64,000 bases of DNA, taken from Macrostomum lignano. Taxonomy: Eukaryota. The notes beneath the pieces are model-generated. The model searched no databases. It was given only the letters and a program-made list of their open reading frames with translations, and was not told the DNA's origin. Each line of letters opens with the position of its first letter. Within the stretch, counting starts at the first letter, position 1. The stretch is taken from positions 1 through 64,000 of the forward strand of contig NIVC01001356.1 in NCBI GenBank assembly GCA_002269645.1, read 5' to 3'. Both the position numbers and the translations under genes were made by a program. Shown piece after piece: positions 3,786-63,654 of the stretch.

Positions 3786-4930
<1,145 letters not shown>

Positions 4931-7330: not shown

Positions 7331-7364
7331 CGCAATAGCTGCGGCTGAGCTGTCGGTTGCACAT

Positions 7365-12654: not shown

Positions 12655-13590
12655 AGACAACCACCTCATTAAAATAGACAACCACCTCATTCAAATAGAC
12701 AACCACCTCATTCAAATAGACAACCACCTCATTCAAATAGACAACCACCTCATTCAAATAGACAACCACCTCATTCAAATAGACAACCACCTCATTCAAA
12801 TAGACAACCACCTCATTCAAATAGACAACCACCTCATTCAAATAGACAACCACCTCATTCAAATAGACAACCACCTCATTCAAATAGACAACCACCTCAT
12901 TCAAATAGACAACCACCTCATTCAAATAGACAACAACCTCATTCAAATAGACAACCACCTCATTAAAATAGACAACAACCTCATTCAAATCGACAACCAC
13001 CTCATTCAAATAGACAACCACCTCATTCAAATAGACAACCACCTCATTCAAATAGACAACCACCTCATTCAAATAGACAACCACCTCATTCAAATAGACA
13101 ACCATCTCATTCAAATAGACAACCACCTCATTCAAATAGACAACCACCTCATTCAAATAGACAACCACCTCATTCAAATAGACAACCACCTCATTCAAAT
13201 AGACAACCATCTCATTCAAATAGACAACCACCTCATTAAAATCGACAACCACCTACTTAAAACAGACAACCGCCTACTTAAAATATTCAACCACCTATTT
13301 AAAATAGACAACCACCTCATTCAAATAGACAACCACCCCATTAAAACAGCCAACCACCCCATTAAAACAGCCAACCACCCCATTAAAACAGCCAACCACC
13401 CCATTAAAACAGCCAACCACCCCATTAAAACAGCCAACCACCCCATTAAAACAGCCAACCACCCCATTAAAACAGCCAACCACCCCATTAAAACTGTCAA
13501 CCACCCCATAAAAATAGACAACAAGTTAATTAAAATAGATAACTACCTACCAAAAAGACAACCATCTCGTCAGGATAGACGACCAATTAA
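12655..13590. repeat. 21 bp intronic minisatellite (GACAACCACCTCATTCAAATA) grading into a related unit
   Basis: Translates as IDNHLIQ repeats, then KTANHPI repeats. Confidence 0.92.
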
Positions 13591-15052: not shown

Positions 15053-15344
15053 ATGCCATGGTTGCACAAGTCGAAGAAATCCAGCAAAGCCTGCAGTTTC
15101 GGCGACTGTCCCGCAGCGGGCAAGAGCGGCAAAGTGCCGCAGGCGGCGTCGCCTCAGCAGCAGCTTCATCAGCCAGCTGCTTCTCACGATGAGCTCCAGG
15201 CAGCGCTGCACAGCGTGCTGGAGGCGCTGCGGAACCTCACAGAGAAGCAACGGCAGGGGCCGCCAGCGTCGCCACCTCAGCATCAGCCAGAAGCTCCTCA
15301 GCGTCGCCACAGGAGCTCCCAGGAGAAGAAGCTCGCAGATAAAA

Positions 15345-15375
<31 letters not shown>

Positions 15376-24501: not shown

Positions 24502-30103
<5,602 letters not shown>

Positions 30104-31254: not shown

Positions 31255-32560
31255 TACATTTGTCCTGTCAATGTCCTCTCTGTGTCCTGCCAATGTCCTC
31301 CCTGTGTCCTGCCAATGTCTTCCCTGTGTCCTTCCAATGTCCTCCAGCTGTGTCCTTCCAATGTCCTCCCTGTGTCCTTCCAATGTCCTTCTGTGTCCTT
31401 CCAAAGTCCTCCCTGTGTCCTTCCAATGTCCTCCTTGTGCCCTTCCAATGTCCTCTCTGTGCCCTTCCAATGTCCTCTCTGTGTCCTTCCAATGTCCTCT
31501 CTGTGTCCTTCCAATGTCCTCCCTGTGTCCTGCCAATGTCCTCCCTGTGTCCTTCCAATGTCCTTCTGTGTCCTTCCAAAGTCCTCTCTGTGTCCTTCCA
31601 ATATCCTCCCTGTGTCCTGCCAATGTCCTCCAGCTGTGTCCTGCCAATGTCCTCCCTGTGTCCTTCCAATATCCTCCCTGTGTCCTTCCAATATCCTCCC
31701 TGTGTCCTGCCAATGTCCTCCCTGTGTCCTTCCAATGTCCTCCCTGTGTCCTTCCAATATCCTCCCTGTGTCCAGCCAATGTCCTCCCTGTGTCCTGCCA
31801 ATGTCCTCCCTGTGTCCTTCCAATGTCCTCCCTGTGTCCTGCCAATATCCTCCCTGTGTCCTGCCAATATCCTCCGTGTCCTGCCAATGTCCTCCAGCTG
31901 TGTCCTGCCAATGTCCTCCCTGTGTCCTACCAATTTCCTCCCTGTGTCCTTCCAATGTCCTTCTGTGTCCTTCCAAAGTCCTCCCTGTGTCCTTCCAATG
32001 TCCTCCTTGTGTCCTTCCAATGTCCTCTCTGTGTCCTTCCAATGTCCTCCCTGTGTCCTTCCAATATCCTCCCTGTGTCCTTCCAATATCCTCCCTGTGT
32101 CCTTCCAATATCCTCCCTGTGTCCTGCCAATGTCATCCAGCTGTGTCCTGCCAATGTCCTCCCTGTGTCCTACCAATTTCCTCCCTGTGTCCTTCCAATG
32201 TCCTTCTGTGTCCTTCCAAAGTCCTCCCTGTGTCCTTCCAATGTCCTCCTTGTGTCCTTCCAATGTCCTCTCTGTGTCCTTCCAATGTCCTCCCTGTGTC
32301 CTTCCAATATCCTCCCTGTGTCCTTCCAATATCCTCCCTGTGTCCTGCCAATGTCCTCCAGCTGTGTCCTGCCAATGTCCTCCCTGTGTCCTGCCAATGT
32401 CCTCCAGCTGTGTCCTGCCAATGTCCTCCCTGTGTCCTGCCAATGTCATCCCTGTGTCCTGCCAATGTCCTGCCTGTGTCCTTCCAATATCCTCCCTGTG
32501 TCCTTCCAATATCCTCCCTGTGTCCAGCCAATGTCCTCCCTGTGTCCTGCCAGTGCCATA
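31255..32560. repeat. 22 bp minisatellite (GTGTCCTTCCAATGTCCTCCCT) with 19 and 25 bp variants
   Basis: Source of the Cys/Pro-rich pseudo-ORFs in several frames. Confidence 0.93.
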
Positions 32561-33524
32561 CCCGTGTCATTTCTGTGTGCCTTCCAGTGTCATCTTTTAA
32601 GTTATCTGGCATACACGTGTCATTCCTCTCATACCTGTGTCATCCTTACGTAGTTTTGGGAGTTTGTGAACTCCAGTATAATTAAACTAAGTTAATCTAA
32701 TGAAAATCAGAACATAAAAAGAGTCTAATAAACAGTCGAAGTTCTCACGCACTGGCTCTGGGAAGTGAGCTAGAGGACGAGAGGGGAGAGGAGGAAAGGA
32801 GGGGAGTGGAGAAGAGGGGAGCGGAGAGGAGGGGAGAAAGGAGGAGAGGAGGGGAGCGGAGAGGAGGTGGGCGAAGAGGAGAGGAGAGGAGGGGAGAAGA
32901 GAAGAGAGAGGGGAGGAGAGGAGAGGAGAGGAGGGGAGATGAAAGAAAAATGGGAGAAAAATACAACACTAATACACAGGATGAATCCCATTCATGCCAA
33001 AGTATCCTCAATGACTTGATGACGTCAACAATGATGAATCCTGAAGACCCGGTTAGTGACATGTCCCTTTTATCACGGAAATTGGTGAAGACCAAAAAAA
33101 AACAAAAAAACAAGAAAACTTCTCAACTTCTCAAAAATTTTAAGATTTTGCAAACCACAAAAGTTTTGCTGAATAAAAAAAGTGTACAAAAACGCTAAGT
33201 TGATCGTGTAAAATTGTGTATTTTTATAACTTCTACTGGCCTTTATAAATAGAAAAAAGCAAATCATCTATACAACTTCATATTTTTATCAATGTAATGT
33301 ATACATAAAGTTGATGAACCTGTAAACAATAAAATACGCGTTTTCTTCTACTGACAGTAGCAATATAAGATTTTTGAAATAGAAATTTATATGGAAGACA
33401 ATAGATTTTAAAAATATTTATAAAAGAAACTATGCATAACTAAGGAACGTATTCGTATTATTTTTTAGGCCAAATACGGAGAGAGAATGTTGTAAATACT
33501 ACTTTCATATTGCTAACGCGTGAT

Positions 33525-34670
33525 AGATAAGGAGATGGGGTGTTAGATAAGCAGATGGGGTGTTAGATAAGGAGATGGGGTGTTAGATAATCAGATGGGG
33601 TGTTAGATAAGCAGATAGGGTGTTAGATAATCAGATGGGGTGTTAGATAAGCAGATGGGGTGTTAGATAATCAGACGGGGTGTTAGGTAAGCAGATGGGG
33701 TGTTAGATAATCAGACGGGTGTTAGATAATCAGATGGGGTGTTAGATAAGCAGATGGGGTGTTAGATAACCAGACGGGGTGTTAGGTAAGCAGATAAGGG
33801 TGTTAGATAAGCAGATGGGTGTTAGATAATCAGATGGGGTGGTAGATAAGCAGATGGGGTGTTAGATAAGCAGACGGGGTGTTAGGTAAGCAGATGGGGT
33901 GTTAGGTAAGCAGATGGGGTGTTAGATAAGCAGATAAGGGTGTTAGATAAGCAGAAAGGGTGTTAGATAAGCAGATGGGTGTTAGATAATCAGATGGGGT
34001 GGTAGATAAGCAGATGGGGTGTTAGATAAGCAGATGGGGTGTTAGGTAAGCAGATGGGGTGTTAGGTAAGCAGATGGGGTGTTAGGTAAGCAGATGGGGT
34101 GTTAGATAAGCAGACGGGGTGTTAGGTAAGCAGATGGGGTGTTAGGTAAGCAGATGGGGTGTTAGGTAAGCAGATGGGGTGTTAGGTAAGCAGACGGGGT
34201 GTTAGGTAAGCAGATGGGGTGTTAGGTAAGCAGACGGGGTGTTAGGTAAGCAGATGGGGTGTTAGGTAAGCAGATGGGGTGTTAGGTAAGCAGATGGGGT
34301 GTTAGGTAAGCAGACGGGGTGTTAGGTAAGCAGATGGGGTGTTAGGTAAGCAGATGGGGTGTTAGATAATCAGACGGGGTGGTAGGTAAGCAGATGGGGT
34401 GTTAGGTAATCAGACGGGGTGGTAGGTAAGCAGATGGGGTGTTAGGTAAGCAGACGGGGTGTTAGGTAAGCAGATGGGGTGTTAGGTAAGCAGACGGGGT
34501 GTTAGGTAAGCAGATAGGGTGTTAGATAATCAGATGGGGTGGTAGATAAGCAGATGGGGTGTTAGATAAGCAGACGGGGTGTTAGGTAAGCAGATGGGGT
34601 GTTAGGTAAGCAGATGGGGTGTTAGATAGCAGATGGGGTGTTAGATAATCAGATGGGATGTTAGATAATC
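33525..34670. repeat. 20 bp minisatellite (GTTAGRTAAGCAGATGGGGT)
   Basis: More than 50 units. Confidence 0.93.
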
Positions 34671-34726: not shown

Positions 34727-35695
34727 CTAAATATGGTAGTTAGGCTTGTACATCTGATCAAATCGTCCCAGATGCTTAGCAACCAGCTCGTCAATCAGGA
34801 GGCTGTCCGCCTCATCAAAGTATCCACGCCAGTCGCCAACCTCGCCGCGTCGATAAAAACCGGTGCCCCGACCTTCGCCCTGGGCAAACAGGTGGCCCAT
34901 ATCGCTGCCTCGGTCGCGCCTCATCCGGTCAAATCCAACGGCATCGCAGATTCCAGTCAACAGCTCCTCAGTGAGCTCGGAAGCACCTTCCGGCATCAAG
35001 AATCGATCGAGTTTTCGAATGACCTCAGCTGGATTCGCTTTCAACTGCTCGTACTCAACTAGGATGACCCGATCAGCTGGCAGCTCTCCGCTAGCCAGAG
35101 AGGCAAGCAGCATCTCATTGTGCTCAAAATACGAACCACCATCCAAAGTGCCGGGCACAAAGAGACCTTTTAGAAAGGCTTGAAATTTACCACTGTACTT
35201 GTAATCGGCAATCCGAGTGTAGTGATGATACAGCGATACAGCCACATCCTTTGGATTCCTAATTGGGCAGATGATCTTAACGCCATTAGACTGCAAAATC
35301 TGCTTTGGCAGAAGCGGCCAAGGCAGGTGACAATTCAACAGCCTTGGAGACGGTTGCGCATTCAAGACTGGCAGCTCAACAAACTCAAGCATCAGCTTCT
35401 CCTTGTTCACCGGACGCTGATGGCACTGCCGGCTGAGCAGGAAGTGGCAGATCTCGTGCAGCCAATGGGTGCCGCATTTCAGGTAGGCCCAGATCAGCAC
35501 ATCATCTTGGCGAGGCTGGAATTCGCTTGGACAGTGCAGCTTTTCTAATCTGTCTTCGATTCCCGTGAAGTCAACGACATAGTAACCGCGCCACAGGCGG
35601 CATTGAACTTCGTTGGCGTCTGTGTCTTTGCGAGTCACTTTGCCTTCGATCGGGGCGCCAGTTTGCGGGTCTAGATGGGGCGATTTTGTCGCCAT
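34727..35695 (-). CDS. Cytosolic (SULT1/2-like) sulfotransferase, intronless, 322 aa
   Basis: 5'-PSB loop AYLKCGTHW, PRLLNCHLP with the catalytic His, 3'-PB motif RNPKDVAVSLYH, and C-terminal RRGEVGDWRGYF. Confidence 0.95.
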   Translation of the reverse strand: MATKSPHLDPQTGAPIEGKVTRKDTDANEVQCRLWRGYYVVDFTGIEDRLEKLHCPSEFQPRQDDVLIWAYLKCGTHWLHEICHFLLSRQCHQRPVNKEKLMLEFVELPVLNAQPSPRLLNCHLPWPLLPKQILQSNGVKIICPIRNPKDVAVSLYHHYTRIADYKYSGKFQAFLKGLFVPGTLDGGSYFEHNEMLLASLASGELPADRVILVEYEQLKANPAEVIRKLDRFLMPEGASELTEELLTGICDAVGFDRMRRDRGSDMGHLFAQGEGRGTGFYRRGEVGDWRGYFDEADSLLIDELVAKHLGRFDQMYKPNYHI

Positions 35696-41800: not shown

Positions 41801-43514
41801 AATCATAGTCTTATAATGATAATAATAGAAGAAAAACAATTATATAATATTAAGCTTATTAATAATCACTTGATATATATCAAACATAAATATACTAATG
41901 ATAGTCCCAAATTATAATACTATTGTCCACATAATGAGACACATAATTAAATGGTCACATAGTCAAATCTTGACTTTTTTGAGATCTTGAAACCCCCTTT
42001 CTTGAATATGCTGTTTTCTCAACAATTTTGAGGTGTGCATAAGGGTTTTTTGTCCTTGATCTATATGCAATAAGACTTCACACATAGCAGTATATGCAAA
42101 AAAAATTTTGGCATGCAGCCATGTGCAAAATGGATTTGGAAATAAAATAGAGGTTTGGATTTTGCTAGACTGTGGAAATTTGTAATTGGCAATGTCTTAA
42201 TTTAATTTTTTTTGATAACTTTAATTACAACATTTTTTAAATAATTGTAATATAATTTTTTTTTAAATTTGTAGCAAAATAAAAGACAAAAAAATAATCC
42301 AATCTATAGAAAAGAATAAATTTATTTTGTTTAAACAGGCTTTGCTACTTTTACTTAAGCAAATTGTTAAAAAATATGAGCACATTTTTGTTTTCAACTT
42401 TTTCTGCTAGTCTTGCATGCAGCATATAATGCAGATGAGGCCCTTGGTGTGCGGCATGCAGTGCATATGAGATTTTTGAATAATCTCAACATGCTGCATG
42501 CAAGGTCAAAAAGTTTCATGGTGTACATGGAATATCTTTGGAACTATAGCTTGAAACCAAGATTGAGATTAAGAAAATGCCAAGATCTTGATGATTGAAA
42601 TCAAGATTGAGATCTTGTCTAACCCCTAATTGCCGCTTGCCTTTTTTACTTGTTCTAGAAAGTGTATATATAAAAGGTCTTAGACTTTTTATTTCTTAAT
42701 TTATAGAAATGACAGTAAAAAACAGAATAAAAAAGTTACAAAAAACTTATAAATAGTAAAAACATAAATCTATTTAAATAACAAAATGCAAGCATTTAGA
42801 TCTACATTATCAATATAACATTTGACAACTATATTTATGATATTTAGAAAATAATTTTAGTATAGGCCTACAAAATAAAATGATTTTTTTCCAAAAGCTT
42901 CAAAAATGTTTGGCTAATAACTAAATGTTAGTAGAAGCCATTATTAGCATTAAGAATTAAGACTTACTATATGTTATATAGTATTTTTTATTATAGCACT
43001 GACATAAAGTTTTGTGGTTAAACTAAAAATGCATTTCCAAAGGTCAGTAGGAAAAGGTATGATAGGCATAGCCATAGGCCTATTGTTGAACAAACCTTTG
43101 CATTGTGTCGCATGAAGACCATTCAGAAGTAGCCAATTGAAGACCAGAATTAGAAGGTCTCAGTGAGAATGATTTCAAACCATCACCATTAACTAGAGCA
43201 CACGCAGTTGCAATTTCGTACAAAGACTCAATACAACCTTCACAGTGTGAATTGAAGTGAACTGTAAGGTGTTGAACAGCTCTTAATGACATAAACTTGT
43301 CGAATTTATGAAGAGAAGCACGGTGATTTTCAAAGCAATCCTGAGCAAAATCTACATAAGCAGATCGCCATATTCTCTTAACAGTGTAGGAAGCTCGACG
43401 CCAGTTATAACACACAAGACCAAAGTTTCTCGCATCAGTGTTTGGCAGTAAACATAACACTTGCTGTAAGACGTTGTGTGGCAGCAGTTCCCATCTGCCT
43501 TGCAAACTTTGCAT
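38829..43514 (-). CDS. FBXO33: FBXO33-like F-box protein, 5 exons, 467 aa
   Basis: Exons 43514-43096, 40890-40644, 40118-39963, 39861-39511, 39059-38829 with consistent phases. N-terminal F-box WELLPHNVLQQVLCLLPNTDARNFGLVCYNWRRA. The segment PDPLMMIAWMCPRLEELAVYGYCVSAHTIVGLAALRGPELLKLEV matches the conserved C-terminal block of FBXO33 as I recall it. Confidence 0.85.
39078..39440. repeat. 23 bp intronic minisatellite (GTCTGTCATATGTGTCTCATGGT)
   Basis: Fills FBXO33 intron 4. Confidence 0.88.
39879..39943 (+). other. 28S rRNA-like fragment inside the 101 bp FBXO33 intron 3
   Basis: GGGTAAACGGCGTGAGTA...CCTCGTCATCTAATTAGTG matches both ends of the 28S helix 69-71 segment; the middle is diverged. 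Confidence 0.6.
40190..40620. repeat. 34 bp intronic minisatellite (TTATCTCAGCTCAGGTAATCAAAATGTCTAACCC)
   Basis: About 12 units in FBXO33 intron 2. Confidence 0.9.
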
Positions 43515-43833: not shown

Positions 43834-44880
43834 ATGGACTGCAGTAGGCAATCGAATCTCTGTGCAGCGGCTTTTGGCAGAAGGCCGCACAAGGGCATGT
43901 ACATGTGCAAGGTGGACCTGAGCCAGGCCTACAGTTCCTGCGCCATTCACCCAAGTGACCACTGCCTCACCGGCCTGAAGTTCACGGTTGAAGGCGATGT
44001 TGAGCCGACCTACATGGTGGACGCCCGGCTGCCGTTTGGTGCAGCAGCGGCATCTGTCAGTGCAGCTTCTTTCAGATTAGCAATGCCATTCGGTTCATGA
44101 TGCTGAAGCGCAAGTTTTACAACTTCGAGGTCTACATGGACGATTTCGGCTTCGCGGGGTCGCTGACTGATTGCTGGCTTTTCTACACCGAGCTGACGCA
44201 GCTGGTGCAGAGGCTGCATGGGCCTGACTGTCTTGAAGAAGTGCGTGCAGCCGACTCAAGAAATGTGCTTCCTGGGCATCCATCCAGTTCAATACTCTGT
44301 CAGGACTCATGAGCTTGCCAGGATCCAAAGTCGAGAAGAGCTGCAGGTCAGCCTTGATCAGTGCTGTGCGATGCGGCAGATCTCCAACAAGCATGCATGA
44401 GCTGCAGAAAGCTGCAGATGGGCAAGCTCAACTGGGCCTGCCAGGTGATTGTCAACGGCCGGCCTTTCTTGCGCAACCTGATCGACTGCGTCAGCAACAA
44501 AGGATCGGCTGTTGGTAGATAACCAGTTAAAGAGCATCCTTGTCTAGTGGAAGCTGTGGCCTTGCGGCAGTAGCGAGGTCGTGAGATTTGGCCCACGTCC
44601 AAAAGACCGGTTGCCATGGAGACGGACGCCTGCCTTGTAGGAGCGGCAGCTATTTTGCGTGACCCGGCCGGCTTTGACTGGTGCTACCTGAAATGGGATG
44701 TCGATGCTGGTATGGCGTCTTCAGCGAGTGCTGCATCAACTACAAGGAGGCTGCTGCAGTCCTGCTGGCCTTGCTGCTCTGGCGCCATCAGCTGCGCAAC
44801 TGCCAGGTCGCCGTCTACTGCGACGACGCCGCTGCCTGCGCGATAATCAACAAGGGTCTTCCACGGAGTCCCGGTTGCTG
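43834..44880 (+). pseudogene. Degraded DIRS/Ngaro-type (tyrosine-recombinase retrotransposon) RT-RNase H fragment
   Basis: Frameshifted pieces: KVDLSQAY, HPSD, LPFG, YMDD, QPTQEMCFLG; RNase H TDACLVG, INYKEAAAV.LALLLW, CDD...IINKG. No recombinase ORF seen. Confidence 0.82.
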
Positions 44881-45539
44881 CAGCTGCTGCATACAACCGT
44901 TGCTTAAACGGTTGCAGTTGCTTATTTTGCGGGTTAACTTTTCTCTCCAGTGGGCCGTTTTAGAGTTTTTTGCATTTGTTGAATAGAAAAGCTGTGGTAT
45001 CAAATTCCCGTTTTTGTTATTTCATCGTTAAATTTTATTTTTACTACGCATTTTGACACCTGGTACAAATCAAGGTACCAAACATGTAAAATTTTAGATC
45101 AATTCTTTATCGAAACTCGACATCCAACTGTTCCCCGGACCTGACTCAACTCGATCGCTTCGATCGTAACTGTAAACTGTAGTAATGGAGCTTTTGTCTA
45201 TAGCAAGGGTGACAAAGCGGCATTTAATTTGGTCCAACAAGCATCAATTTTTGGTCCAAACGCGTGAGCCATTGGACAAATTTGTAGTGATCCGCTAATT
45301 GGTGTTAGGCGTCGCACTTTGTCAGCAGTCGCCCTTGCCCTCGCCCTCGCCCTGGGTTGCTGTCTGCCGCTGGTCAGCTTCCTGCCTCCCTCCTTTTGTC
45401 TGTCTGTTGCTGCTCCCTTCCCTCGTTTTGCCCGTTTTGCCCCTTGTTTCTCAGCCCTCAGCTTCTCTGCTGTGGGCTGTCTCTGTTTCGCTCGGTCTTT
45501 GTTTCCCCTGTCATGTGAGCGAGTCACATGACAGATCCT

Positions 45540-49072: not shown

Positions 49073-49678
49073 ATTAATTAACGATGGTAATTAATTCTCA
49101 ACAAATAACTCCGCAAGCTCCGTACCGACGCGACTGGAACCGTCAGCCAACTGCTTGGGCCTGTCGAGACATCGCATCCCCGTTTCTCTCTCTCATTAGG
49201 CTGCGCTGCTGTCCCACAATGCAGAATTTTAATTATTGGCAAATGCGCCCAAAAGAGAAAATCATATCTCATATCTTGTCTCTAATCTGCTCCGACTATC
49301 TAGTGCCGCATCGGCACACCACCAGCGAGTGCCAAAGCTGTGAAATATTGCCAGCAATTAAACAGATCGGCTGCAAACGGTGACAGGCATCGCAGGAGCG
49401 CTGAATTCTGAGTGTATTAGGACATAAGCGCGTGCGGCCTGTGGGCAGTGGCATCCCAACGACCGTGACAATCTATTCAAAGTTTTGTAGGATAATTAAT
49501 TAAAGCAAAAACTTGGAGCCTCAAATCGACTAAATACTATATGTAGGCAGCAGAGCTAAATTCTTCATTGTTTTTTATGAGCTAATTTTATCCAAAAGTG
49601 TAGACATAACATTAAACAGAGCTTTAAAAAGCTATTCGGTTTTGGTACAGCCCTACACTAAAGAGTTCGCTGAGTAGA

Positions 49679-52600
49679 ATGAAATCAACCGCGAGCAGCA
49701 GCTCCGGGGCATCAGAGAGACCCCGCTCAGCCGTGCGTTAGTTCTGTGGCTACACGACCGCCCACGGCCTGGGCCGCTTCTCCGAGCAGTCTACCTTTTT
49801 CGGCAGGCTCATCTGGGTTTCTTTTCTGCTGAGCACCTACGGCGGCTTTGTCTATCACCTGTACACCCTGTTCGACAGGTTTGCCCAGGCTCCTGTGCTC
49901 ACCACAATGACCGTGTCCTCGCTGCCGTTCCAGTTCCCGGATGTGTACATCTGCCCGACGCAGGCGAACACCATGAGCAAGGCCATTACGTCTCTGACCG
50001 ATTATGGAGTTACCAACGTGGAGTTTCTTACCAAGAGAACCATCGACGAGAAGATTGGCTTTTACGATTTTGACCTTAAAAGCAGTGGCTTCAACCAGAT
50101 GACGTGGGCACTGCTGAGCGTCCTGGAAAGCACGGAGGAGTCACTAATGGCGAAGTTTCAGTTTCCAGCACGTGGTGAGCACTCTGCTATTTGAAGATAC
50201 TTTGTCAGTGCAGCATTCTATATATCAGAGCTCTTATCTGATAAGATCCCTATTCAATATAGAGAAGTTGAATTGCTTTAGGCTTTGAGCAGATCGGGCT
50301 GCATCAAATGCTTTCCTTAAAAAATTGTTAGAGAACCAATCCGAGTGTCGGACAACGCTCTCAGGCGAGGAATACTCTGGCAACGTGAGTTCAGCGGTTG
50401 TCTACGGATTTGCCACCATGACAGTCACGTCCGTGAACACCTCGGCATTCGAGCCCAGTCCGTATAGAGCGCTTAGGTCGTGCATACCATGGAATGATGC
50501 AGCTCGGATGCTGCATAGTACAAGCGCCAGCCTAGCCAACAGGCTGCTAACACTCAACTTTTCCGACGACGAGTCCCGCTGTCGCTCGCCGCCCGGACTG
50601 CCGCTGTCTGAGCTTCTGCCGTTTGCATCTCGTGAGTCAAAGAAAATTCAGAGATGGGAAAGCTCTAACAAAAAATAAAGCATCGCGCGTTGCTGATTTT
50701 CCAGGACCAACGTTACGGCTTATCGGCTGCTTCCCAAAAAAGACTGTGGATGCAATATTTCCTGTCTGCTCAGAGCTTCAAATCATCACTTATGAATCCT
50801 GCGCCGAATGCTGCGCCAGACTCAATTTCCCGTACGTGGCCCTCCAGCCCCTGTCGTGCCGATGCGGCTTCAGCATCAGCGGCATCAGGAATAGGTCCGA
50901 CACGTGCGACAGTTATTGCAAGAACGATGGCACAAGAGTTTGCGGCTCAGCTACTAGCGCTACGGTTCTACAGATTCGGGACAATGGTGAGTGAATCATT
51001 CAATCATGTAGGCCCGAGTTCGGAGAGCATCAGGAGGCATTTTAACCAACAGCTCAGATCCTATAGATCGTCTGTATTCGTCTGTATTCGTCTAGTTTCT
51101 TATTTCATGTTTTTAGCATCAAAGGCGCTGCACATAGGAAACTTCAGCCAGTTGACACCGCAGGCGTACGGGCCCTACTGCTTCTTTAGAGATGAGATTG
51201 GCAAGCTGAATGCCGGCTTCTGTGAAATCCCCTTTTGCCGAATTTGTAAGTCCAACCCGCCGCAGTGATGAACTTCATCGCCAAGATCTCGAGAAAATTA
51301 GCTTCTAGGCTCAAACTGCTCACTTTTCAGCCAACTCGAAGACCTACGACTGCGCCGTGAGCTCATCTGACAAGCATGTAGAGCAGCTGCAGCTCTCTCG
51401 GTACACGGGACGGACGAACGTCACCGCCTCCGGCAGACGATGCATGCCTTGGAGTAAATTGCCGAGAATCGAGGAGCTGGTTAAAACGCGCAGTCAGTAC
51501 CGCCTGTTCACTTGAAGCTCTCACAGTCTAGAAAAAATGCATTCTCAACTTGAATTCCTACCTTCATGCAGTATTCGCCCTGGCTGAGGCTTTTAAAAAT
51601 ATCTACATCCGAGTTCCCGACGAAATCGAGAACAGCGAGGACAATTTCTGCCGCTCGGCGAGCATTGTGGTCGACTCTGTCCCATTTTGGGACGAAACTA
51701 TGATAATGTGAGTTCAAAACTGAGTTAGTGACAAATCTTTGTACTAGTTCCAATCTTTTCTTCCATCTTAGGCGACGCAGCGTCGTTAGCTCAAGCGTGC
51801 CAATTTGCATCCCAGAAGACTTTCTCGTCGGGTTTGTGACACCGATGATCTTTGGTTTCGTCACATTTTTTGAATTGGCGGTAGAGACCTGCGATATACC
51901 GAAGTGCTGTGAGTTTTGAGCCTTTTAGAGAAGCTAAAATTAGGACAGGCTATATTGACTGTTCGAATTTAACCTGCATTTTAGACACCACGGCCCCCAG
52001 CGTGACTCGCGCTATCAGCGACTCGGTCGGCAGCCACCTGCTGGCTCGCCAATTCGGCAGCGACCTCGGCGTCAGCCTCGCTGAGTGCAGCTTTGCTGGT
52101 CAGAAATGCACCAAGGAGGACTTTGTGAACTTCGCCCACCCGCAGCTGGGCATGTGCCACCAGTTTCTCAAGCAGCGCTTCACCGCCAACATGAGCAGCA
52201 CGCAGCTGGCAGAGAGCCAGCTGTCAGTCAAGTACTTCACGGACTCGACAGACGCGAAGGGACAGACGTTGTCAAATATTGACAAGCTGACGCGGGTGGT
52301 GCGAGGAGGCCGCAATGCTGATGCCAGACAGACGGCATTCAAGGTGAGTCTTTGACGGCTGCTTACACTGACACTGAACAGTGCTCACTCTCATACTGAA
52401 CAGTGCTCACTCTCACACTGAACAATGCTCACTCTCACACTGAACAGTGCTCACTCTCATACTGAACAATGCTCACTCTCACACTGAACAGTGCTCACTC
52501 TCATACTGAACAGTGCTCACTCTCACACTAAACAGTGCTCACTCTCATCTGAACAGTGCTCACTCTCACACTGAACAGCTGAACAGTGCTCACTCTCATA

Positions 52601-54216
52601 CTGAACAATGCTCACTCTCACACTGAACAGTGCTCACTCTCATACTGAACAGTGCTCACTCTCACACTAAACAGTGCTCACTCTCATCTGAACAGTGCTC
52701 ACTCTCACACTGAACAGCTGAACAGTGCTCACTCTCATACTGAACAGTGCTCACTCTCACACTGAACAATGCTCACTCTCACACTGAACAATCACCTGAG
52801 CCTCCATTGCGAACTTGAAGGCCGTCATCGTACCGGAGGGATCCTTCCCATGGGCTTCAAAGAGCATCGACGTGGCCACGGCTCAGCGCATGGACGTGCA
52901 GCTTAGCTTGAACAAGTACTCGAAACTGTCCAGCGCATCCAGGCCCTGCGCGGAGACCACAGAACCGGTCACATATCGACTGCCGTCCTGGAACATGCCA
53001 CCATCGAATGAAAATTTCAAGTACTAATCTGTATCCTGCTTTGGGGAATTAACCTGTGCTAACTTGTGCTAATATCGTTATTACGCTATGAATTCATTTA
53101 CGTCGTACTAATACTAACCTTGGCTCCAGAATTGATTGGGCCGCAAAAAGGATCATTTCAACCAACGGCTGGACACGGAAACTGTCGATGCTGCGCGAGA
53201 CGCTGCTGAACAACAGCGGCCCAAGGTTAGTAGTGCCAGCAGGTGAAGTGCTCCTGAAGTTATTGTTAACTGCGGAAACTGTCACAACAAACGAAAAGTA
53301 CTTCGCAATTTCAGCATCCTGACCGATGCGGGCCGCCTGTTTGACATCCCCGATCGAGACGACTGTGTCAACACCTACGTCGTGCAGGCCTTCATCGACA
53401 ACTGCGGATGTCTGCCGTCGATTCTCCCTATCAAAGACGAGCTGCTCGCCAATTTCAGTTACTGCTTCAACATCAAAGATGCTGATAACATTTCTGACGA
53501 CACCGAGAGGTGCTACATTGATCAAATGTCCCGGATTACACAATATCAATATGAGGCTACAAAACTCTGCAAGCCGCTGTGCAGCACCTTCGAATACACC
53601 AGCCGCTTCATCCCCTACGTCTGGCCGAACCTGCATTTCATGCAGTCGTTCGAGTTCCTGAGGCAGCTGGCTTCCGACTTCGGTTACCGGCACAACATCA
53701 GCCGGCTGAGGGGTGTCTCCAGCCTGTACTATGCATATCTGAGAGCTCAGAGACTCGCAGACACGCCAGTTAGCAAAATCAGCAGCGCCGAGTCTCAGAG
53801 CTTTGATGTGGAGCTGACGGCGCTGGAAAACCGGCTGGCTCAGCTAACCGTCCAGGCTGAGCGGCCATTCGGCCAGGAGGTCTCGGAGGAGCCGGCCTAC
53901 CCCGCCAAGAACCTCCTGGCCGACATTGGAGGTAAGAAATCATTTTGAGTGGTTTTGGCATCGGCAGCGCGAATTCCGTCAGTTTCAATCGGATTGCTTT
54001 TCAGGCGCCCTGGGTCTCTGGTCCGGCATCTCCATTCTCACTGTCTGCGAGTTGCTGGAGCTCTTCATCTACCTGGGGCAGGAGCTGGTCCTGAGGATGC
54101 GGCGACAGCCCTCCAAGAGGCAGCCAGGAGACAACAACGAGCCTGACTTACCGTCTAAGGTAGAGATGGAGTCGGAGATGAACGCGGCTGAGAATGAAAG
54201 AGTAACTCATTTTTGA
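49679..54216 (+). CDS. DEG/ENaC (ASIC-like) channel subunit with kringle-WSC-kringle insertions, 12 exons, ~1041 codons, in-frame TAG at codon 21
   Basis: Exons 49679-50174, 50332-50631, 50705-50986, 51117-51245, 51331-51492, 51572-51707, 51772-51908, 51985-52343, 52821-53020, 53130-53225, 53315-53931, 54005-54216; all GT-AG with matching phases. Motifs: TTAHG, TM1, FPDVYICP, CSFAGQKC..DF....LGMCHQF, NCGCLP, C.KPLC, TM2 LLADIGGALGLWSGISILTVCELLE. Confidence 0.9.
52373..52792. repeat. 22 bp intronic minisatellite (CTGAACAGTGCTCACTCTCACA)
   Basis: Fills channel intron 8. Confidence 0.92.
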
Positions 54217-55519
54217 TTGAAGAGAAATCCTTGCTAAAATTCTGGGGCAGTCAGTGCACGGACGAATGGAGTAGAAGGACGCTGCTCTTCCTAATCAGGA
54301 AAATTTTCTGCACCCTCAAAATACACTAGCTACCGTACATAGGGAATCGGAATTCCCAGCACTAGGTTAGTCACCTTCTGGATCTCCACAGTAGCGTAGC
54401 CACAAACACTTTGATGCTTGCTTTATTCACCATCCAAAATTCCACAAGCCGATAAAATATCTTAGCGCTTAGTGCTGAGAATCTGGTGTTTTTTTACCTC
54501 ACTGAATGCGTTTTTGTGCCGGCAACCTGCAGTGATAGTGTGTTGCTTTATTTTGCAGCGCCCTTCCACTTAGGAACAGACCGTGAATGAATGTTAAACT
54601 GGATCGCAGATTGCTTATTTAATCTGTGAAAGGCAAAATGAGCTTCAGTGATTTTTGCTAATTCGCATGCTTGAATCGCTGATATTACACAATATTACAT
54701 CATAACCTTATCGCATTATGATACACTACATTATTACTTTATGATATCATAGCATGATATTCTCCGGTCACTACATAATCTTATTATTGCGTTATCAAAT
54801 TATTAAATGATGATATTATCACATAACAAGATCATCATATAATACATTACCTTTTCGCTTAAACGATACTGGCCTTGCGATTTTCACATAATTAAATACG
54901 AGTTTCATTAAGTGTGCCCAAAACCGCGTCCTTTGTCAACACTATTCTTCTTTAGCTGTCCATAGAATGAATGAAACACCGGAAATTTTGCAGTTCACTC
55001 TCAGAACTGAATGTAAGCGCCACGAATAAAAAGCTGCTTTGCCTCCATTTCACAGATATTTTTGTTATTGCATTGCAAGTATATAATCCTATTAATTCGA
55101 AAAAATCTTTTTCAGCTGACACAAAAAAGTTTTTAAAAATTGCTGCAGTGACAAAGCTGAGCTGCTGAGCAAATTTTTTCGAATTAAAAATTGTTAAAAA
55201 ATTTTGCTTCCTGAAGCGGCTCGCATGCGGCGAGATGAAGACCGCTTGTCCTTTAATAATGTGCTGCGGCTGGGCCTTTTACGGCTCCAGTTTATTTGGG
55301 CCATAGACAGTTGAGCAGCAGTGGCTGGCTCTGTCAAAAGTACATGTGTCCACTACACAACTCCCCCAGAGCCAGACAATGTGCTCTTGCATTGTGCTCG
55401 CTGGGAGCTCAGCTGCTGTGGTAAACGGCTGGGTCAGCTGCGGTTACTTTGCCACTGGAAGCGATGGAACGCAATGGAAGCGACTGGGTTAGAAAAGGGT
55501 CACCGAGCTGTATGTATGC

Positions 55520-58895: not shown

Positions 58896-60205
58896 CGAGG
58901 GTCACTCAGAAAGTCTTTAGCCTGAGTAGGATCCACGAGACGTAGAAGCATGAAATTTGTCTATGGTAAAGACCAACTTTTAAAAGTATCGCAGCAAAAA
59001 TTTCAAACAGAAGCAGCCACTTTTGAGTCCACTGCAGCGAGTTAAAGTCAGTTCAACCCCTGAGTTCTTCAATTCAACAATGAAGCTGGAAAATCGCGAC
59101 TTCAGAGCAATGATGTACCTGCACTTCAAGCAAGGCAAGTCGCCGGCCGAATCGTATCAAACTTTACAGAACGTTTTCACCCATGTATGTCCTTCATACG
59201 CAACCGTCAAAAACTGGTTCGCTGAGTTTCGCCGAGGTCGAGAAAGCCTCGAAGATGAACATCGATCCGGGAGACCCTGTGACGCAGTGACTCCAGAAAA
59301 TATCTGCGCTGTGTCCAGCATGATTGCCGCTGACCGGCGAGTGACCTACCAGCAGATCCAGCAGGAGATCGGTATTGGATCGGGGAGTGTGCACGCCATT
59401 ATGCACGAACACCTTGGAGTGCGGAAGCTGGCTTCCCGGTGGATCCCCCATCAGCTGTCGGACGTGCAGAAGGACACCAGGGTGGCTTGGTGCCGATTCA
59501 TGCTGCAGAAATTCGAATCCGGGACCAGCCGGCGTATCTGGGACATCCTCACGGGCGATGAGACCTGGATTTATCAATACGACCCCGAAAGCAAGCGCCA
59601 GTCAGCCATGTGGACCTTTGGAGACGAGGACAGCCCCACAAAGTTTCGACGCAGCCGGAGTGTCGGCAAGCAGATGGTGGCCTGTTTCTTCATGCGCACT
59701 GGGCATGTGGCTTCCGTTTCACTTGAAGATCGCCAGACAGTCACCGCTGACTGGTACACAACGGTTTGCCTGCCCAAGGTCTTTTCTGCTGTGAGCCAGA
59801 GGCGCCCAAGGTGCGGAATGCGTGGGGTGCTTCTGCACCACGACAACGCCAGCGCGCACACGGCGGCTCAAACTCTGGAGTTTCTGGCTGACTGTGGGGT
59901 CCAGCTGATGACTCACCCTGCTTACAGTCCAGACCTGGCACCGTGCGACTTTTTTCTGTTTCCGAAGTGCAAGGAGATTCTGAAGGGCCAGGTTTTTTCT
60001 TCACCGGAAGAAGCTGTAAATGAGTTCAAAAACATCATCGAGGAGCTCCGGGATGAGGATTGGCGGCATTGCTTCGACAGCTGGTTTCACAGGATGCAAG
60101 CCTGTATCAATGCCGGTGGAGAGTATTTTGAGCACTTGTAGTCGTTTTTTAGTTCATTTGTTGCTGTTTTCGTGTTCAGGCTAAGAACTTTCTGAGTGAC
60201 CCTCG
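58896..60205 (+). mobile_element. Full-length mariner transposon (1310 bp), irritans-like
   Basis: TA duplication at 58894-58895 and 60206-60207; 30 bp TIRs CGAGGGTCACTCAGAAAGTCTTTAGCCTGA, 28/30 identical. The subfamily call rests on the CGAGGG TIR start and is inference. Confidence 0.96.
59080..60141 (+). CDS. Mariner DD34D transposase, intact, 353 aa
   Basis: WIPHQL, TGDETW, HDNA and YSPDLAPCD motifs; 34 residues between the second and third Asp; no stops. Confidence 0.96.
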   Translation: MKLENRDFRAMMYLHFKQGKSPAESYQTLQNVFTHVCPSYATVKNWFAEFRRGRESLEDEHRSGRPCDAVTPENICAVSSMIAADRRVTYQQIQQEIGIGSGSVHAIMHEHLGVRKLASRWIPHQLSDVQKDTRVAWCRFMLQKFESGTSRRIWDILTGDETWIYQYDPESKRQSAMWTFGDEDSPTKFRRSRSVGKQMVACFFMRTGHVASVSLEDRQTVTADWYTTVCLPKVFSAVSQRRPRCGMRGVLLHHDNASAHTAAQTLEFLADCGVQLMTHPAYSPDLAPCDFFLFPKCKEILKGQVFSSPEEAVNEFKNIIEELRDEDWRHCFDSWFHRMQACINAGGEYFEHL

Positions 60206-61764: not shown

Positions 61765-63541
61765 GCAAGACAGCGAAGTCGACTTTTGTCAAGCAGCAAT
61801 TTGACCAGCGCCTCTGGCATCGCCTGCGGGCCTCCCTCCGCAACCGCCTGCGACCTACCCCAGCTGCCAAGACAAATTCGTCGACCATGGCTATCAAATT
61901 CTACTACTATTAGTAGTGCAGAAGTTCGCTCTAGATTCATTGAACATTTCTCATCTGGTAGTTCTTCGTCGAAGCTCCAGCACACTGTGGTGCCATCGTC
62001 CTCCGTGATTGCACGCGAAGGCGAGGGCTCGTTCTTTATCAATGCCGGAATGAACCAGTTTAAATCGAGAATATTAGGCGAACCTAATGCTAAATTTGCC
62101 GGTGTAAATCGAGCTGTTAGTGCACAGCGTTGTCTCCGAGTTGGCGGTCGTCAGCACAATGATTTAGAATCGGCTGGTCGTGATGGAAGCCATCACAGCT
62201 TCTTTGAGATGCTCGGAAATTGGTCGTTTGGAGATTATTGGAAACGGGAGGCCTGTAGCATGACTTGGAAGTTTCTTACTGAGGTGAGAATTATTGTCTT
62301 TTTTAAATTATTAGTTCTTACTGCTTTGAGTTGATTCAAAGTTCCAAGGCTCACCAACCCTGATTTCTCAGAATCCTTGATCCTGGGCCTTCCAATCGAG
62401 ATTTCTTAGAATCGTTGATCCAGGGCCCAACAACCCAGATTTCTTAAAATCATTGATCCAGGGCCCACCAACCCAGATTTCTTAAAATCATTGATCCAGG
62501 GTCCTCCAATCCCAATTTATTAAAATATTGGATCCAGGGTCCTCCAAATCTAATTTCTTAAAAGCATTGCTCCAGGGTCCACCAACCCTGATTTCTTAGA
62601 ATCATTATTGATCCAGGGACTACAACCCTGATTTCTTAGAATCGTTGATCCTGGGCTCTCCAATCCAGATTTCTTAGAATCGTTGATCCAGGGCCCACCA
62701 ACCCAGATTTCTTAAAATCATTGATCCAGGGTCCTCCAATTCTAATTTCTTAAAAGCATTGATCCAGGGTCCACCAACCCTGATTTCTTAGAATCATTAT
62801 TGATCCAGGGACTACAACCCTGATTTCTTAGAATCATTATTGATCCAGGGACTACAACCTTGATTTCTTAGAATCGTCGATCCAGGGTTTTCTAATCCTG
62901 TTTTCTAGAATCGTTGATCCAGGGTCCTCCAATCTTGATTTCTTAGAATCGTTTATCCAGGGCCCACCAACCCAGATTTCTTAGAATCGTTTATCTAGGA
63001 CCCACCAACCCAGATTTCTTAGAATCGTTGATCCAGGATCCACAAACCCTGATTTCTTAGAATCTTTAATCCTGGGTCCACCAACCCTGATTTCTTAGAA
63101 TTTACCAAGCAACCCTGATTTTTACCAAGCAAAATGAAATTGCCCCCACAGACGATGAAGCTGCCAGCTTCCCAGCTCTATGTCACCTATTTCGGCGGCT
63201 GCCCGGAGCTCGGTCTGCCTGCAGATTCCGAAACTCGCGACATCTGGTTAAGCCTCGGTGTTAGCGACCAACGCCTGTTGCCATTCGGAATTGAGCACAA
63301 TTTCTGGGAAATGGGCGACACCGGGCCCTGCGGCGTGAGCACCGAAATTCATTTTGATCACGTTGGCGGCCGGTGCGCCAGGTGTTTTGTTAATACTGCG
63401 GTGCCGGACGTTGTGGAACTGTGGAATCTTGTGTTTATGGATCGGTTGAGAACTGCTGCTGGTAAAACGGAATTGAAGAGTCTAGGAATGAGAACTGTTG
63501 ACACTGGTATGGGTTTGGAACGGCTGACGGCTCTTATGCAG
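61765..63541 (+). CDS. AARS2: Alanyl-tRNA synthetase, mitochondrial type, partial (exons 61765-62283 and 63152-63541; continues beyond the window)
   Basis: FINAGMNQFK, QRCLRVGG.HNDL, HHSFFEMLGNWSFGDY, ETRDIWLSLGV, NFWEMGDTGPCG, VELWNLVFM, VDTGMGLERL; Arg/Ser-rich N-terminal extension. Start codon unresolved. Confidence 0.9.
62350..63110. repeat. ~38 bp intronic minisatellite (GATCCAGGGCCCACCAACCCAGATTTCTTAGAATCGTT)
   Basis: Fills the AARS2 intron. Confidence 0.88.
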
Positions 63542-63654
63542 GTGAGGTTGACGTTATTGTTCGGGATTAGCTTTAAGAGTACAGGGTTTATGATCTTTGT
63601 TCCCCATCAGAATTTTAGATTTCTATAATCTGTTTTACTCAGAATCCCAGGTTG

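What the first reader, a model, noticed from the sequence alone, without database searches (positions are those of the whole stretch)
49679..54216. DEG/ENaC channel carrying two kringles and a WSC domain in its extracellular finger region
Seen: six exons (50332-51908, ~380 aa) lie between the FPDVYICP strand and the CSFAGQKC motif. They encode kringle 1 (ECR..GEEYSGNVS..SCIPW..RCRSP / GPYC..FCEIPFC), a WSC domain (LIGCF..ITYESCAECC..FPYVALQ..SCRCG..CDSYC..VCGS) and kringle 2 (YDC..YTGRTNVTASGRRCMPW..DNFCRS..VPIC..TCDIPKC). Established: this position is the variable finger domain, which holds the protease-cleaved inhibitory region in ENaC and the peptide site in FaNaC. Kringle plus WSC is the ectodomain pairing of Kremen receptors; WSC domains are linked to glycan binding and kringles to protein/lysine ligands. 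Inference: a cation channel gated or modulated by a macromolecular ligand (glycan, protease or secreted protein), built by exon shuffling. I do not know of this architecture being characterised.
Basis: partly seen in the sequence, partly recalled or inferred. Interest (0 to 1): 0.88.

Follow-up and report, generated by a model that had tools for sequence, protein, structure and literature searches.

The report
Flatworm sodium channel with kringle-WSC insert
This flatworm (Macrostomum) gene encodes a DEG/ENaC-type sodium channel subunit with a 380-residue kringle/WSC/kringle module inside the outer "finger" region that controls gating in related channels; the layout is undescribed and seen only in this genus, and this copy has a stop codon at codon 21.

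Summary
A 12-exon, + strand gene (49679-54216, all GT..AG, phases consistent) encodes a 1041-codon DEG/ENaC subunit (Pfam ASC 130 bits). Exons 2-7 (50332-51908, 382 aa) lie between FPDVYICP and CSFAGQKC.

They encode a kringle whose Cys3-Cys4 loop is interrupted by a single-exon WSC domain, then a second, enlarged kringle. WSC passes Pfam's threshold. Both kringles fall below it, but match genuine kringles in profile-profile comparison (98% probability).

The insert evolves under purifying selection (dN/dS 0.15-0.47). Six or more Macrostomum lignano paralogs have it, four of them from RNA-seq-based transcript models. An exhaustive profile search of 1.84 billion proteins found the full module nowhere else. 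I found no paper on it.

- WSC is nested inside kringle 1, not placed between the kringles.
- The window is M. lignano or a sibling species, and the gene is an unannotated paralog.
- Codon 21 is an in-frame TAG, so this copy may be a recent null.

Exon shuffling is well supported. Gating by a macromolecular ligand is untested inference. Verdict: a new variant of a known channel family, of moderate to high interest.

The parts
49679..50174 (+). Exon 1: start ATG, cytoplasmic N-terminus, FCGYTTAHG (HG motif), TM1, FPDVYICP strand, first part of the finger
   Evidence: aligns to FaNaC and PPK26 TM1/beta1; 73% nt identity to the M. lignano paralog exon
49739..49741 (+). In-frame TAG at codon 21 (the paralog has CGG = Arg here)
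   Evidence: It is the only stop in 1041 codons. It also creates an AG just before TTC TGT GGC
50332..50631 (+). Exon 2 (phase 1-1): kringle 1, N-terminal part (Cys1, Cys2-x-x-W, Cys3 'RCRSP'), with a 23-aa extra loop
   Evidence: dN/dS 0.15
50705..50986 (+). Exon 3 (phase 1-1): complete WSC domain, nested in the Cys3-Cys4 loop of kringle 1
   Evidence: Pfam WSC 37.9 bits, above the 27.8 cut-off; PDB profile hits to yeast Wsc1 (E 1.7e-9) and Kremen1 WSC (E 3e-8); a single exon in paralogs too
51117..51245 (+). Exon 4 (phase 1-1): linker plus kringle 1 C-terminal part (GPYC = Cys4, FCEIPFC = Cys5 and Cys6)
51331..51492 (+). Exon 5 (phase 1-1): kringle 2, Cys1, YTGRTNVTASGRRCMPW (Cys2)
   Evidence: Pfam Kringle E 1e-5; PDB tPA K2 E 3e-4; hhalign 98.2%
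51572..51707 (+). Exon 6 (phase 1-2): kringle 2 middle part, long loop and NFCRS (Cys3)
51772..51908 (+). Exon 7 (phase 2-1): kringle 2 C-terminal part (PIC = Cys4, hydrophobic loop FLVGFVTPMIFGFVTFFEL, TCDIPKC = Cys5 and Cys6)
51985..52343 (+). Exon 8: return to the channel body (last finger helix region, CSFAGQKC, beta-ball); the most conserved exon
   Evidence: 84% nt identity to the paralog
52360..52790 (.). 22-bp minisatellite filling intron 8
   Evidence: The corresponding intron of the paralog is only about 45 bp, judged from tblastx coordinates (L001 about 7263-7309)
52821..53020 (+). Exon 9: extracellular domain
53130..53225 (+). Exon 10: extracellular domain
53315..53931 (+). Exon 11: Cys-rich thumb/palm region up to the pre-TM2 'LLADIGG'
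   Evidence: (ASC best stretch 780-991)
54005..54216 (+). Exon 12: TM2 (ALGLWSGISILTVCELLE, GIS filter), C-terminus, TGA stop
   Evidence: the GIS motif is as in FaNaC1

Best explanation
SHOWN. The locus is one gene for a DEG/ENaC channel subunit. It belongs to a multigene subfamily so far seen only in Macrostomum. In this subfamily the finger region (between the post-TM1 strand and the CxFxGxxC strand) carries a 380-aa, disulfide-rich, N-glycosylatable module. The module is a kringle split by a nested WSC domain, followed by a second, enlarged kringle.

The module was assembled by exon shuffling. It is made of symmetric phase-1 exons, and WSC is a single phase 1-1 exon dropped into an intron inside kringle 1. 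It has since been kept under purifying selection across paralogs that are only 35-60% identical.

INFERRED. As in other DEG/ENaCs, the protein should form a trimeric, Na+-selective, amiloride-type pore, since the HG motif, DIGGxLGL and the GIS filter are intact. Three kringle[WSC]-kringle modules would then sit on the outer upper corner of the trimer. [quoted passage not shown]

The most likely role of the module is to bind an extracellular macromolecule: a glycan through WSC, and a protein or matrix partner through the kringle scaffolds. This would couple binding, or force transmitted through such a tether, to finger movement and gating.

The copy in this window carries TAG at codon 21. As assembled, it is either a very recent null allele or pseudogene, or it needs a different 5' end.

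My confidence in the architecture is about 0.9. My confidence that the module regulates gating through a macromolecular partner is about 0.35.
For: - Gene model with consistent phases, and only one stop in 1041 codons.
- ASC 130 bits; WSC above its cut-off.
- Kringle identity: hhalign 98% for both kringles against 72 genuine kringles; all six cysteines align in register for K1, and the K2 alignment begins after Cys1. PDB hits are almost all kringles.
- WSC profile hits Wsc1 and Kremen1.
- Cysteines and motifs are invariant across 7 paralogs.
- dN/dS against the closest paralog: K1N 0.15, WSC 0.47, K1C 0.23, K2 0.19, channel remainder 0.32.
- Exon structure is conserved, and WSC is a single phase 1-1 exon in P0001 and in the distant P0011.
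- The M. lignano GenBank models containing the insert derive from RNA-seq transcript assemblies (PMC5730564).
- The insert position maps to the finger alpha1-alpha3 region of FaNaC, and that corner drives gating (PMC11026163).
- Eight N-x-S/T sites in the insert fit an extracellular location.
Against: - No functional data exist for any member.
- The in-frame TAG at 49739-49741 means this copy may not make a protein.
- This paralog has no counterpart among annotated or expressed M. lignano proteins (best hit 59%).
- Both kringles fail Pfam's gathering threshold.
- The AF2 models were poor (pLDDT 50 and 68) and Foldseek gave no kringle or WSC match.
- In the tPA alignment, the stretch after Cys3 where plasminogen-type kringles carry the lysine-site aspartates (position recalled from memory) reads CRSPPGLP in K1, so the partner cannot be guessed from plasminogen-type kringles.
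- K2 is about 60 aa larger than a normal kringle and has a strongly hydrophobic loop.
Confidence: 0.6

Rival explanations
1. This copy is a recently inactivated pseudogene or null allele of the subfamily. The architecture is real, but nothing is made from this locus.
For: TAG at codon 21 lies in a conserved position (R or Q in paralogs). There is no in-frame ATG before TM1 ends. No protein more than 59% identical exists in a collection that holds both M. lignano annotations, although the neighbouring sulfotransferase is there at 98%.
Against: The other 1040 codons are open, all 22 splice sites are canonical, and dN/dS is about 0.3, so any inactivation is very recent. The syntenic Mlig_3_7 contig ends before the gene, so missing annotation may be an assembly gap. 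The TAG could be a base error or a heterozygous variant. The TAG also creates an AG acceptor, and the Macrostomum spliced leader ends in ATG (PMC8629364). Trans-splicing at 49741|49742 would therefore give M-FCGYTTAHG in frame; this is speculative.
Confidence: 0.3
2. The module is a matrix tether for mechanotransduction rather than a receptor for a diffusible ligand. WSC and the kringles would anchor the finger to extracellular matrix or cuticle-like glycans, so that displacement pulls the channel open.
For: From my own knowledge, not tested here: DEG/ENaC mechanosensors in C. elegans rely on extracellular matrix partners; yeast Wsc1 and polycystin-1 are WSC-bearing mechanosensors. The WSC profile's best PDB hit is the Wsc1 sensor domain. 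The insert sits in the gating-coupled finger.
Against: There is no expression, localisation or physiological data. Nothing in the sequence distinguishes tethering from ligand binding.
Confidence: 0.2
3. The module has no role in gating. It serves folding, trimer assembly, trafficking or surface anchoring, or it is an autoinhibitory plug removed by proteolysis, like the ENaC inhibitory tracts.
For: The same finger corner holds protease-binding sites in ENaC. Loops within the module are long and variable. WSC is the least constrained part (dN/dS 0.47).
Against: All 22 cysteines of the module and several motifs are kept in paralogs down to about 35% identity. That argues for a folded, functional surface rather than a disposable peptide. 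I did not look for conserved dibasic or furin sites.
Confidence: 0.15
4. Gene-model artefact: exons 2-7 belong to a separate secreted kringle/WSC gene lying in a long intron of the channel gene.
For: None beyond the absence of RNA data for this exact locus.
Against: Reading phase is continuous across all junctions. The insert has no start codon, signal peptide or stop codon. The same order is present in six or more paralogs, including RNA-seq-derived transcript models. Introns are only 64-157 bp.
Confidence: 0.03

Closest known systems
FMRFamide-gated sodium channels (FaNaC; PDB 7yvb, 8on7) and the DEG/ENaC superfamily in general
   Same: Pfam ASC 130 bits. The best PDB sequence matches are FaNaCs (E 4e-14 and 2e-11). 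Shared features are the HG motif, the FP-V-IC strand, CxFxGxxC, DIGGxLGLWxGIS and the GIS filter. The finger alpha1-alpha3 region is the hypervariable, gating-coupled region.
   Different: The channel core is very divergent: a word-seeded search found only Macrostomum relatives. The finger carries a 382-aa three-domain module instead of three short helices. No peptide, proton or other agonist is known.
Kremen1/2 ectodomain (Kringle-WSC-CUB; PDB 5fws/5fww)
   Same: It is the known case of a kringle and a WSC domain packed together in one ectodomain (PMC5014086, listed). The WSC profile hits Kremen1 WSC at E 3e-8.
   Different: In Kremen the domains are in series and are followed by CUB and one TM helix. 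Here WSC is inserted inside the kringle's Cys3-Cys4 loop, a second kringle follows, there is no CUB, and the host is a two-TM channel. The kringle profiles' best PDB hits are tPA, HGF, ROR1/2 and prothrombin, not Kremen. Common origin is not shown.
[quoted passage not shown]
   Same: They are a precedent for a DEG/ENaC subunit that has acquired an extra extracellular adhesion-type module (PMC10424705). They too are uncharacterised and gave no currents in oocytes.
   Different: The module type differs (EGF rather than kringle/WSC) and the lineage differs. I did not check the position of the EGF domains.
ENaC finger inhibitory tracts (GRIP domain)
   Same: Lineage-specific extra sequence in the same external corner of the trimer, which holds ENaC's protease-binding sites and regulates gating.
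   Different: The ENaC insert is a short beta-strand region released by furin or prostasin. It is not a set of autonomous disulfide-rich domains.
Invertebrate multi-kringle proteins (e.g. P0038, P0040, P0099, P0132)
   Same: They are the closest kringle relatives. They share the motif style CRxTxxGxEYxGxxNxTxSGxxCxxW ... NFCRxP ... PWCF ... CDIPFC, and already have longer loops than vertebrate kringles.
   Different: They are tandem kringle arrays of 72-104 aa per domain, with no WSC insertion and no channel.

Membership tests
DEG/ENaC (Pfam ASC, PF00858) | Match to the ASC profile above the curated cut-off | tested here: met
   130.3 bits against a 23.6 cut-off, three stretches split by the insert
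DEG/ENaC (Pfam ASC, PF00858) | Two TM segments with an N-terminal HG motif, a post-TM1 FPxVxxC strand, pre-TM2 DIGGxLGL and a TM2 GxS filter | tested here: met
   FCGYTTAHG, FPDVYICP, ADIGGALGLWSGISILTVCELLE; the GIS filter is as in FaNaC1
DEG/ENaC (Pfam ASC, PF00858) | Uninterrupted reading frame in this copy | tested here: not met
   TAG at codon 21, 49739-49741; the rest of the frame is open
DEG/ENaC (Pfam ASC, PF00858) | Trimeric amiloride-sensitive Na+ channel activity | not testable with these tools
   Needs heterologous expression
Kringle (PF00051) | Match to the Pfam profile above the gathering score | tested here: not met
   K2 26.2 bits and K1 (WSC removed) 18.5 bits against 34.3. 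Kringle is the only family hit recurrently, in 6/7 and 5/7 paralogs
Kringle (PF00051) | Six cysteines in canonical order with the YxG, CxxW, CRxP, P[WY]C and CxIPxC motifs | tested here: met
   Invariant across 7 paralogs for both kringles; K1 aligns in register with tPA K2 from Cys2 to Cys6
Kringle (PF00051) | Profile-profile homology to genuine kringles | tested here: met
   hhalign 98.4% (E 1e-14) for K1 and 98.2% (E 3e-14) for K2, against 72 kringles from proteins scoring 150-296 bits on Pfam Kringle; controls 0.1-0.2%
Kringle (PF00051) | Compact triple-loop fold of about 80 aa | tested here: inconclusive
   The domains are 120 aa (WSC excised) and 143 aa. AF2 pLDDT was 50 and 68, and Foldseek found no kringle
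WSC (PF01822) | Match to the Pfam profile above the gathering score, plus the conserved cysteine set | tested here: met
   31.1 and 37.9 bits against 27.8; ten cysteine columns invariant across paralogs; PDB profile hits to Wsc1 (E 1.7e-9) and Kremen1 (E 3e-8)
WSC (PF01822) | Carbohydrate binding | not testable with these tools
   Needs a glycan array with recombinant protein
Kremen-type receptor | Serial Kringle-WSC-CUB ectodomain on a single-pass membrane protein | tested here: not met
   WSC is nested in kringle 1, there is no CUB hit, and the host is a two-TM channel

The most novel reading that the evidence does not exclude
The kringle[WSC]-kringle module makes these channels direct ionotropic sensors of an extracellular macromolecule. 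Either a glycan or protein from mates, prey, microbes or matrix acts as the agonist, or the module is a built-in matrix tether that turns the channel into a self-contained mechanosensor. Either would be a gating mode not known in the DEG/ENaC superfamily. It would also be an unusual case of one disulfide-rich domain nested in another being recruited into an ion channel.
Probability: 0.2. Interest if true: 0.85.

Novelty: new variant of a known kind. Interest (0 to 1): 0.6.

Why it matters
DEG/ENaC channels are known to respond to protons, peptides, bile acids, proteases and force. All of these act through small sites on the channel's own ectodomain. Here a whole lectin-type domain and two kringles have been grafted into the finger, the part that starts the gating movement in FaNaC.

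If the module controls gating, it shows how exon shuffling can give an ion channel a new class of stimulus. It would also offer a natural template for engineering ligand-gated channels.

The host genus is practical to work with. M. lignano has transgenesis, RNAi, in situ protocols and RNA-seq resources, and intact paralogs (e.g. Mlig006056.g1, Mlig007204.g1) are available for oocyte work.

The finding also shows that database annotation ('WSC domain-containing protein') hides both the channel context and the kringles.

Tried and rejected
- Structure of the P0001 insert. AF2 with a 5-sequence alignment gave pLDDT 50. Foldseek against PDB gave only noise.
- Structure of K2 alone. AF2 with 7 sequences gave pLDDT 68 and again no kringle match. 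The alignments are too shallow, so I treat the fold test as inconclusive, not negative.
- Spliced window protein.
- Rfam on the whole window. No hits. The 249-bp element that is 90% identical to L001 is therefore not a known RNA gene.
- Species identification with the alanyl-tRNA synthetase exon. Uninformative: the best hits were about 50% identical and none was from Macrostomum. The sulfotransferase ORF settled the question.
- Ortholog assumption. I first treated P0001 as the ortholog from another species. I rejected this after finding 90-97% nt collinearity with M. lignano contig NIVC01000223.1. P0001 is a paralog, and the dN/dS values are paralog against paralog.
- A tiny 9-nt intron (GTGCGTTAG) removing the TAG. 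I considered this and rejected it as too short.
- Stop-codon reassignment. I considered it only briefly and have no evidence for it; no sense TAG appears elsewhere in this gene.
- Literature. Searches for ENaC with kringle/WSC, for Macrostomum with ENaC, for the M. lignano gene IDs, and for 'amiloride-sensitive sodium channel' with 'WSC domain' found nothing relevant.


Full report
**What is in the sequence**

Three-frame translation and splice-site reading of 49600-54300 give a 12-exon gene on the + strand. The exons are 49679-50174, 50332-50631, 50705-50986, 51117-51245, 51331-51492, 51572-51707, 51772-51908, 51985-52343, 52821-53020, 53130-53225, 53315-53931 and 54005-54216.

Every intron is GT..AG, and introns are 64-157 bp, except intron 8 at 477 bp. 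The phases join into one 3126-nt reading frame that ends at the TGA at 54214-54216.

Codon 21 (49739-49741) is TAG, just before the conserved FCGYTTAHG motif. The closest paralog has CGG (Arg) there and another has Gln. It is the only stop in 1041 codons.

**Domain content**

Pfam gives ASC at 130 bits. WSC scores 31 bits in context and 38 bits alone, above its 27.8 cut-off. Kringle scores only 26 bits (K2) and 15-18 bits (K1), below the 34.3 cut-off. I therefore tested the kringle call in other ways.

- Alignment of the window protein with six paralogs shows all six kringle cysteines invariant in canonical order in both units. The YxG, CxxW, CRxP, P-[YW]-C and C-x-[IV]-P-x-C motifs are also present.
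- Profiles of K1 (with WSC excised) and K2 searched against all PDB sequences return kringles almost exclusively: tPA K2, HGF, ROR1/2, prothrombin, plasminogen and neurotrypsin. The weak K1 list also includes chance talin matches. E is 3e-4 for K2 and 0.11 for K1.
- Profile-profile comparison against 72 kringles gives 98.4% (E 1e-14) for K1. It gives 98.2% (E 3e-14) for K2. The 72 kringles were cut from invertebrate multi-kringle proteins that score 150-296 bits on Pfam Kringle. K1 aligns from Cys1 to Cys6; the K2 alignment runs from the YxG motif to Cys6.
- The control, WSC against kringle, gives 0.1-0.2%.

The WSC profile hits the yeast Wsc1 sensor domain (E 1.7e-9) and human Kremen1 WSC (E 3e-8).

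Structure prediction did not help. Models from 5-7 sequences had pLDDT 50 and 68, and Foldseek returned noise.

**Arrangement**

The order along the gene and the protein is:

1. K1 Cys1-Cys3 (exon 2)
2. WSC (exon 3)
3. Linker and K1 Cys4-Cys6 (exon 4)
4. K2 (exons 5-7)

WSC is therefore nested in the Cys3-Cys4 loop of kringle 1. It does not lie between the two kringles.

- With WSC excised, the stretch after Cys3 aligns with tPA's CRNPDGDA and reads CRSPPGLP in K1.
- From memory, that stretch carries the lysine-site aspartates in plasminogen-type kringles, so classical lysine binding looks unlikely.
- K2 is about 60 aa larger than a normal kringle. In this copy it has a strongly hydrophobic 19-aa loop.
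- The insert has 22 cysteines and 8 N-x-S/T sites.

**Position in the channel**

With the insert removed, the protein aligns to FaNaC structures on both sides. FPDVYICP matches the post-TM1 strand. TRAISDSVGSHLLARQF...CSFAGQKC matches the last finger helix and the CRFNREEC/CHYAGHRC strand. The insert therefore lies inside the finger alpha1-alpha3 region.

The FaNaC1 structural paper shows that these helices form the FMRFamide pocket. Their movement starts gating.

The pore motifs are intact (ADIGGALGLWSGISILTVCELLE, with a GIS filter as in FaNaC1).

**Origin by exon shuffling**

Exons 2, 3, 4 and 5 are all phase 1-1, and WSC is exactly one such exon. The same boundaries and phases hold in the M. 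lignano paralogs P0001 (L001 5503-5790) and P0011 (L002 4594-4896). Those two are only about 35% identical to each other. Insertion of a symmetric WSC exon into an intron within kringle 1, before the paralogs diverged, is the simplest reading.

**Is the insert really coding and spliced in?**

Nei-Gojobori dN/dS between the window gene and its closest paralog:

| Region | dN/dS |
|---|---|
| K1N | 0.15 |
| WSC | 0.47 |
| K1C | 0.23 |
| K2 | 0.19 |
| Rest of the channel | 0.32 |

dS is about 1.

Four of the M. lignano proteins with the insert are GenBank models of assembly Mlig_3_7: Mlig006056g1, Mlig013355g1, Mlig034226g1 and Mlig007204g1. That annotation was built from genome-guided RNA-seq transcript assemblies with TransDecoder ORFs (PMC5730564). 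In paralogs, therefore, the kringle/WSC exons are part of the channel mRNA. I have no RNA evidence for this particular locus.

**Organism and status of this copy**

- A single-exon sulfotransferase ORF at 34727-35695 (- strand) is 98% identical to M. lignano Mlig009372g2.
- Window positions 24.4-43.8 kb are collinear with Mlig_3_7 contig NIVC01000223.1 at about 90-97% nucleotide identity. The match includes non-coding DNA and shared minisatellites.
- The gene order is the same: RhoGAP-START, sulfotransferase, F-box.

The window is therefore M. lignano (another haplotype, homeolog or assembly) or a sibling species.

The channel gene is not the ortholog of P0001. It is 59% identical at the protein level, dS is about 1, and the neighbours differ (L001 has zf-U1 and RPL22e upstream). 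It is an additional paralog with no counterpart in the protein collection.

The syntenic Mlig_3_7 contig ends about 1.65 kb past the fetched stretch, before the position where the channel gene would lie. Its absence from annotation could therefore be an assembly gap rather than lack of expression.

Taken at face value, the TAG makes this copy a very recent null. One speculative rescue exists. The TAG creates an AG at 49740-49741, and the 35-nt Macrostomum spliced leader ends in ...TTGCATG (PMC8629364). The leader is conserved in the genus. Trans-splicing there would read ATG-TTC-TGT-GGC..., that is M-FCGYTTAHG, in frame.

**Distribution and novelty**

A profile of the insert was searched with HMMER, without prefilter, against 1.84 billion cluster representatives. 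It matched over its full length only in P0002, P0003, P0005, P0008 and P0011. It matched partially in P0010, P0013 and P0029. All of these are M. lignano proteins. The remaining hits are multi-WSC or multi-kringle proteins.

Only the top 150 of 1538 hits are listed. Channels elsewhere with just one of these domains are therefore not excluded.

Full-text searches found no paper linking DEG/ENaC with kringle or WSC, and none mentioning these gene IDs. The nearest conceptual precedent is the C. elegans EGAS group ('EGF plus ASC domain'), which is also uncharacterised (PMC10424705).

Kremen shares the kringle and WSC pairing, but in series, with CUB, on a single-pass receptor. The kringles here are closer to tPA, HGF and ROR kringles than to Kremen's.

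**Mechanism**

Shown:
- A DEG/ENaC subunit with an intact pore signature.
- A conserved, selected, extracellular kringle[WSC]-kringle module in the finger.

Inferred:
- The protein forms a trimeric Na+ channel.
- The module binds a macromolecule, with a glycan for WSC the most likely.
- Binding, or force through that link, moves the finger and biases gating.

Alternatives are a pure matrix tether for mechanosensation, an assembly or trafficking or autoinhibitory role, and, for this locus only, a dead copy. None can be separated with sequence tools.

**Verdict**

This is a new variant of a known channel family, restricted so far to Macrostomum, and open to experiment in a tractable model animal.

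Noticed in passing
window 1-64000 (e.g. 1321-2898, 3778-4936, 8614-9662, 12655-13568, 20878-22143, 25059-26486, 31261-32552, 33520-34668): The window is very rich in long mini- and microsatellite arrays: 51 TRF rows with score of 200 or more, and units of 4-192 bp. Several are shared in position with the syntenic M. lignano contig L003 but differ in copy number.
   Followed up: partly
window 52360-52790: Intron 8 of the channel gene is almost entirely a 22-bp minisatellite (about 19 copies, with a 139-bp higher-order unit). The corresponding intron of the paralog in L001 is only about 45 bp, judged from tblastx coordinates.
   Followed up: partly
window 7125-7371 and L001 19114-19355: A 249-bp non-coding element is 90% identical between the window and the unrelated M. 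lignano contig carrying P0001. It lies next to a tandem array (7377-8067). There is no Rfam match. It is probably a dispersed repeat.
   Followed up: partly
window 43834-44986 (+): Frameshifted remnants of a retroelement lie between the F-box gene and the channel gene. They include reverse-transcriptase motifs (KVDLSQAY, YMDDFGFAG) and an RNase H-like stretch (AVYCDDAAACAIINKG). The start of the syntenic Mlig_3_7 stretch (L003 1-1155) has no long match to the window.
   Followed up: no
window 34727-35695 (-): An intact single-exon cytosolic sulfotransferase gene (Pfam Sulfotransfer_1, 145 bits), 98% identical to M. lignano Mlig009372g2. This match identified the source organism.
   Followed up: yes
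window 26985-28043 (+) and 43080-43514 (-): Exons of a RhoGAP(-START) gene and of an F-box gene, in the same order and orientation as on M. lignano contig NIVC01000223.1.
   Followed up: partly
window 59023-60141 (+): A 372-aa ORF with Mos1/mariner HTH domains and a partial DDE transposase domain: a mariner-type transposon copy.
   Followed up: no
window 61786-62334 and 63134-63628 (+): Two exons of a class II alanyl-tRNA synthetase gene (tRNA-synt_2c, 141 and 87 bits), separated by a 38-bp-unit minisatellite (62343-63101). The best database hits are only about 50% identical, and none is from Macrostomum.
   Followed up: partly
window 51826-51882 (protein aa 519-537): The Cys4-Cys5 loop of kringle 2 contains a 19-aa stretch, FLVGFVTPMIFGFVTFFEL. 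Its Kyte-Doolittle mean of 1.9 is higher than that of either TM helix. Paralogs have aromatic-rich but less hydrophobic loops here.
   Followed up: no
window 15053-17458 (+): An 801-aa open frame with long poly-Q/CAG tracts (16964-17222) and no Pfam match. It may be a low-complexity coding exon or a chance ORF in GC-rich repeat DNA.
   Followed up: no
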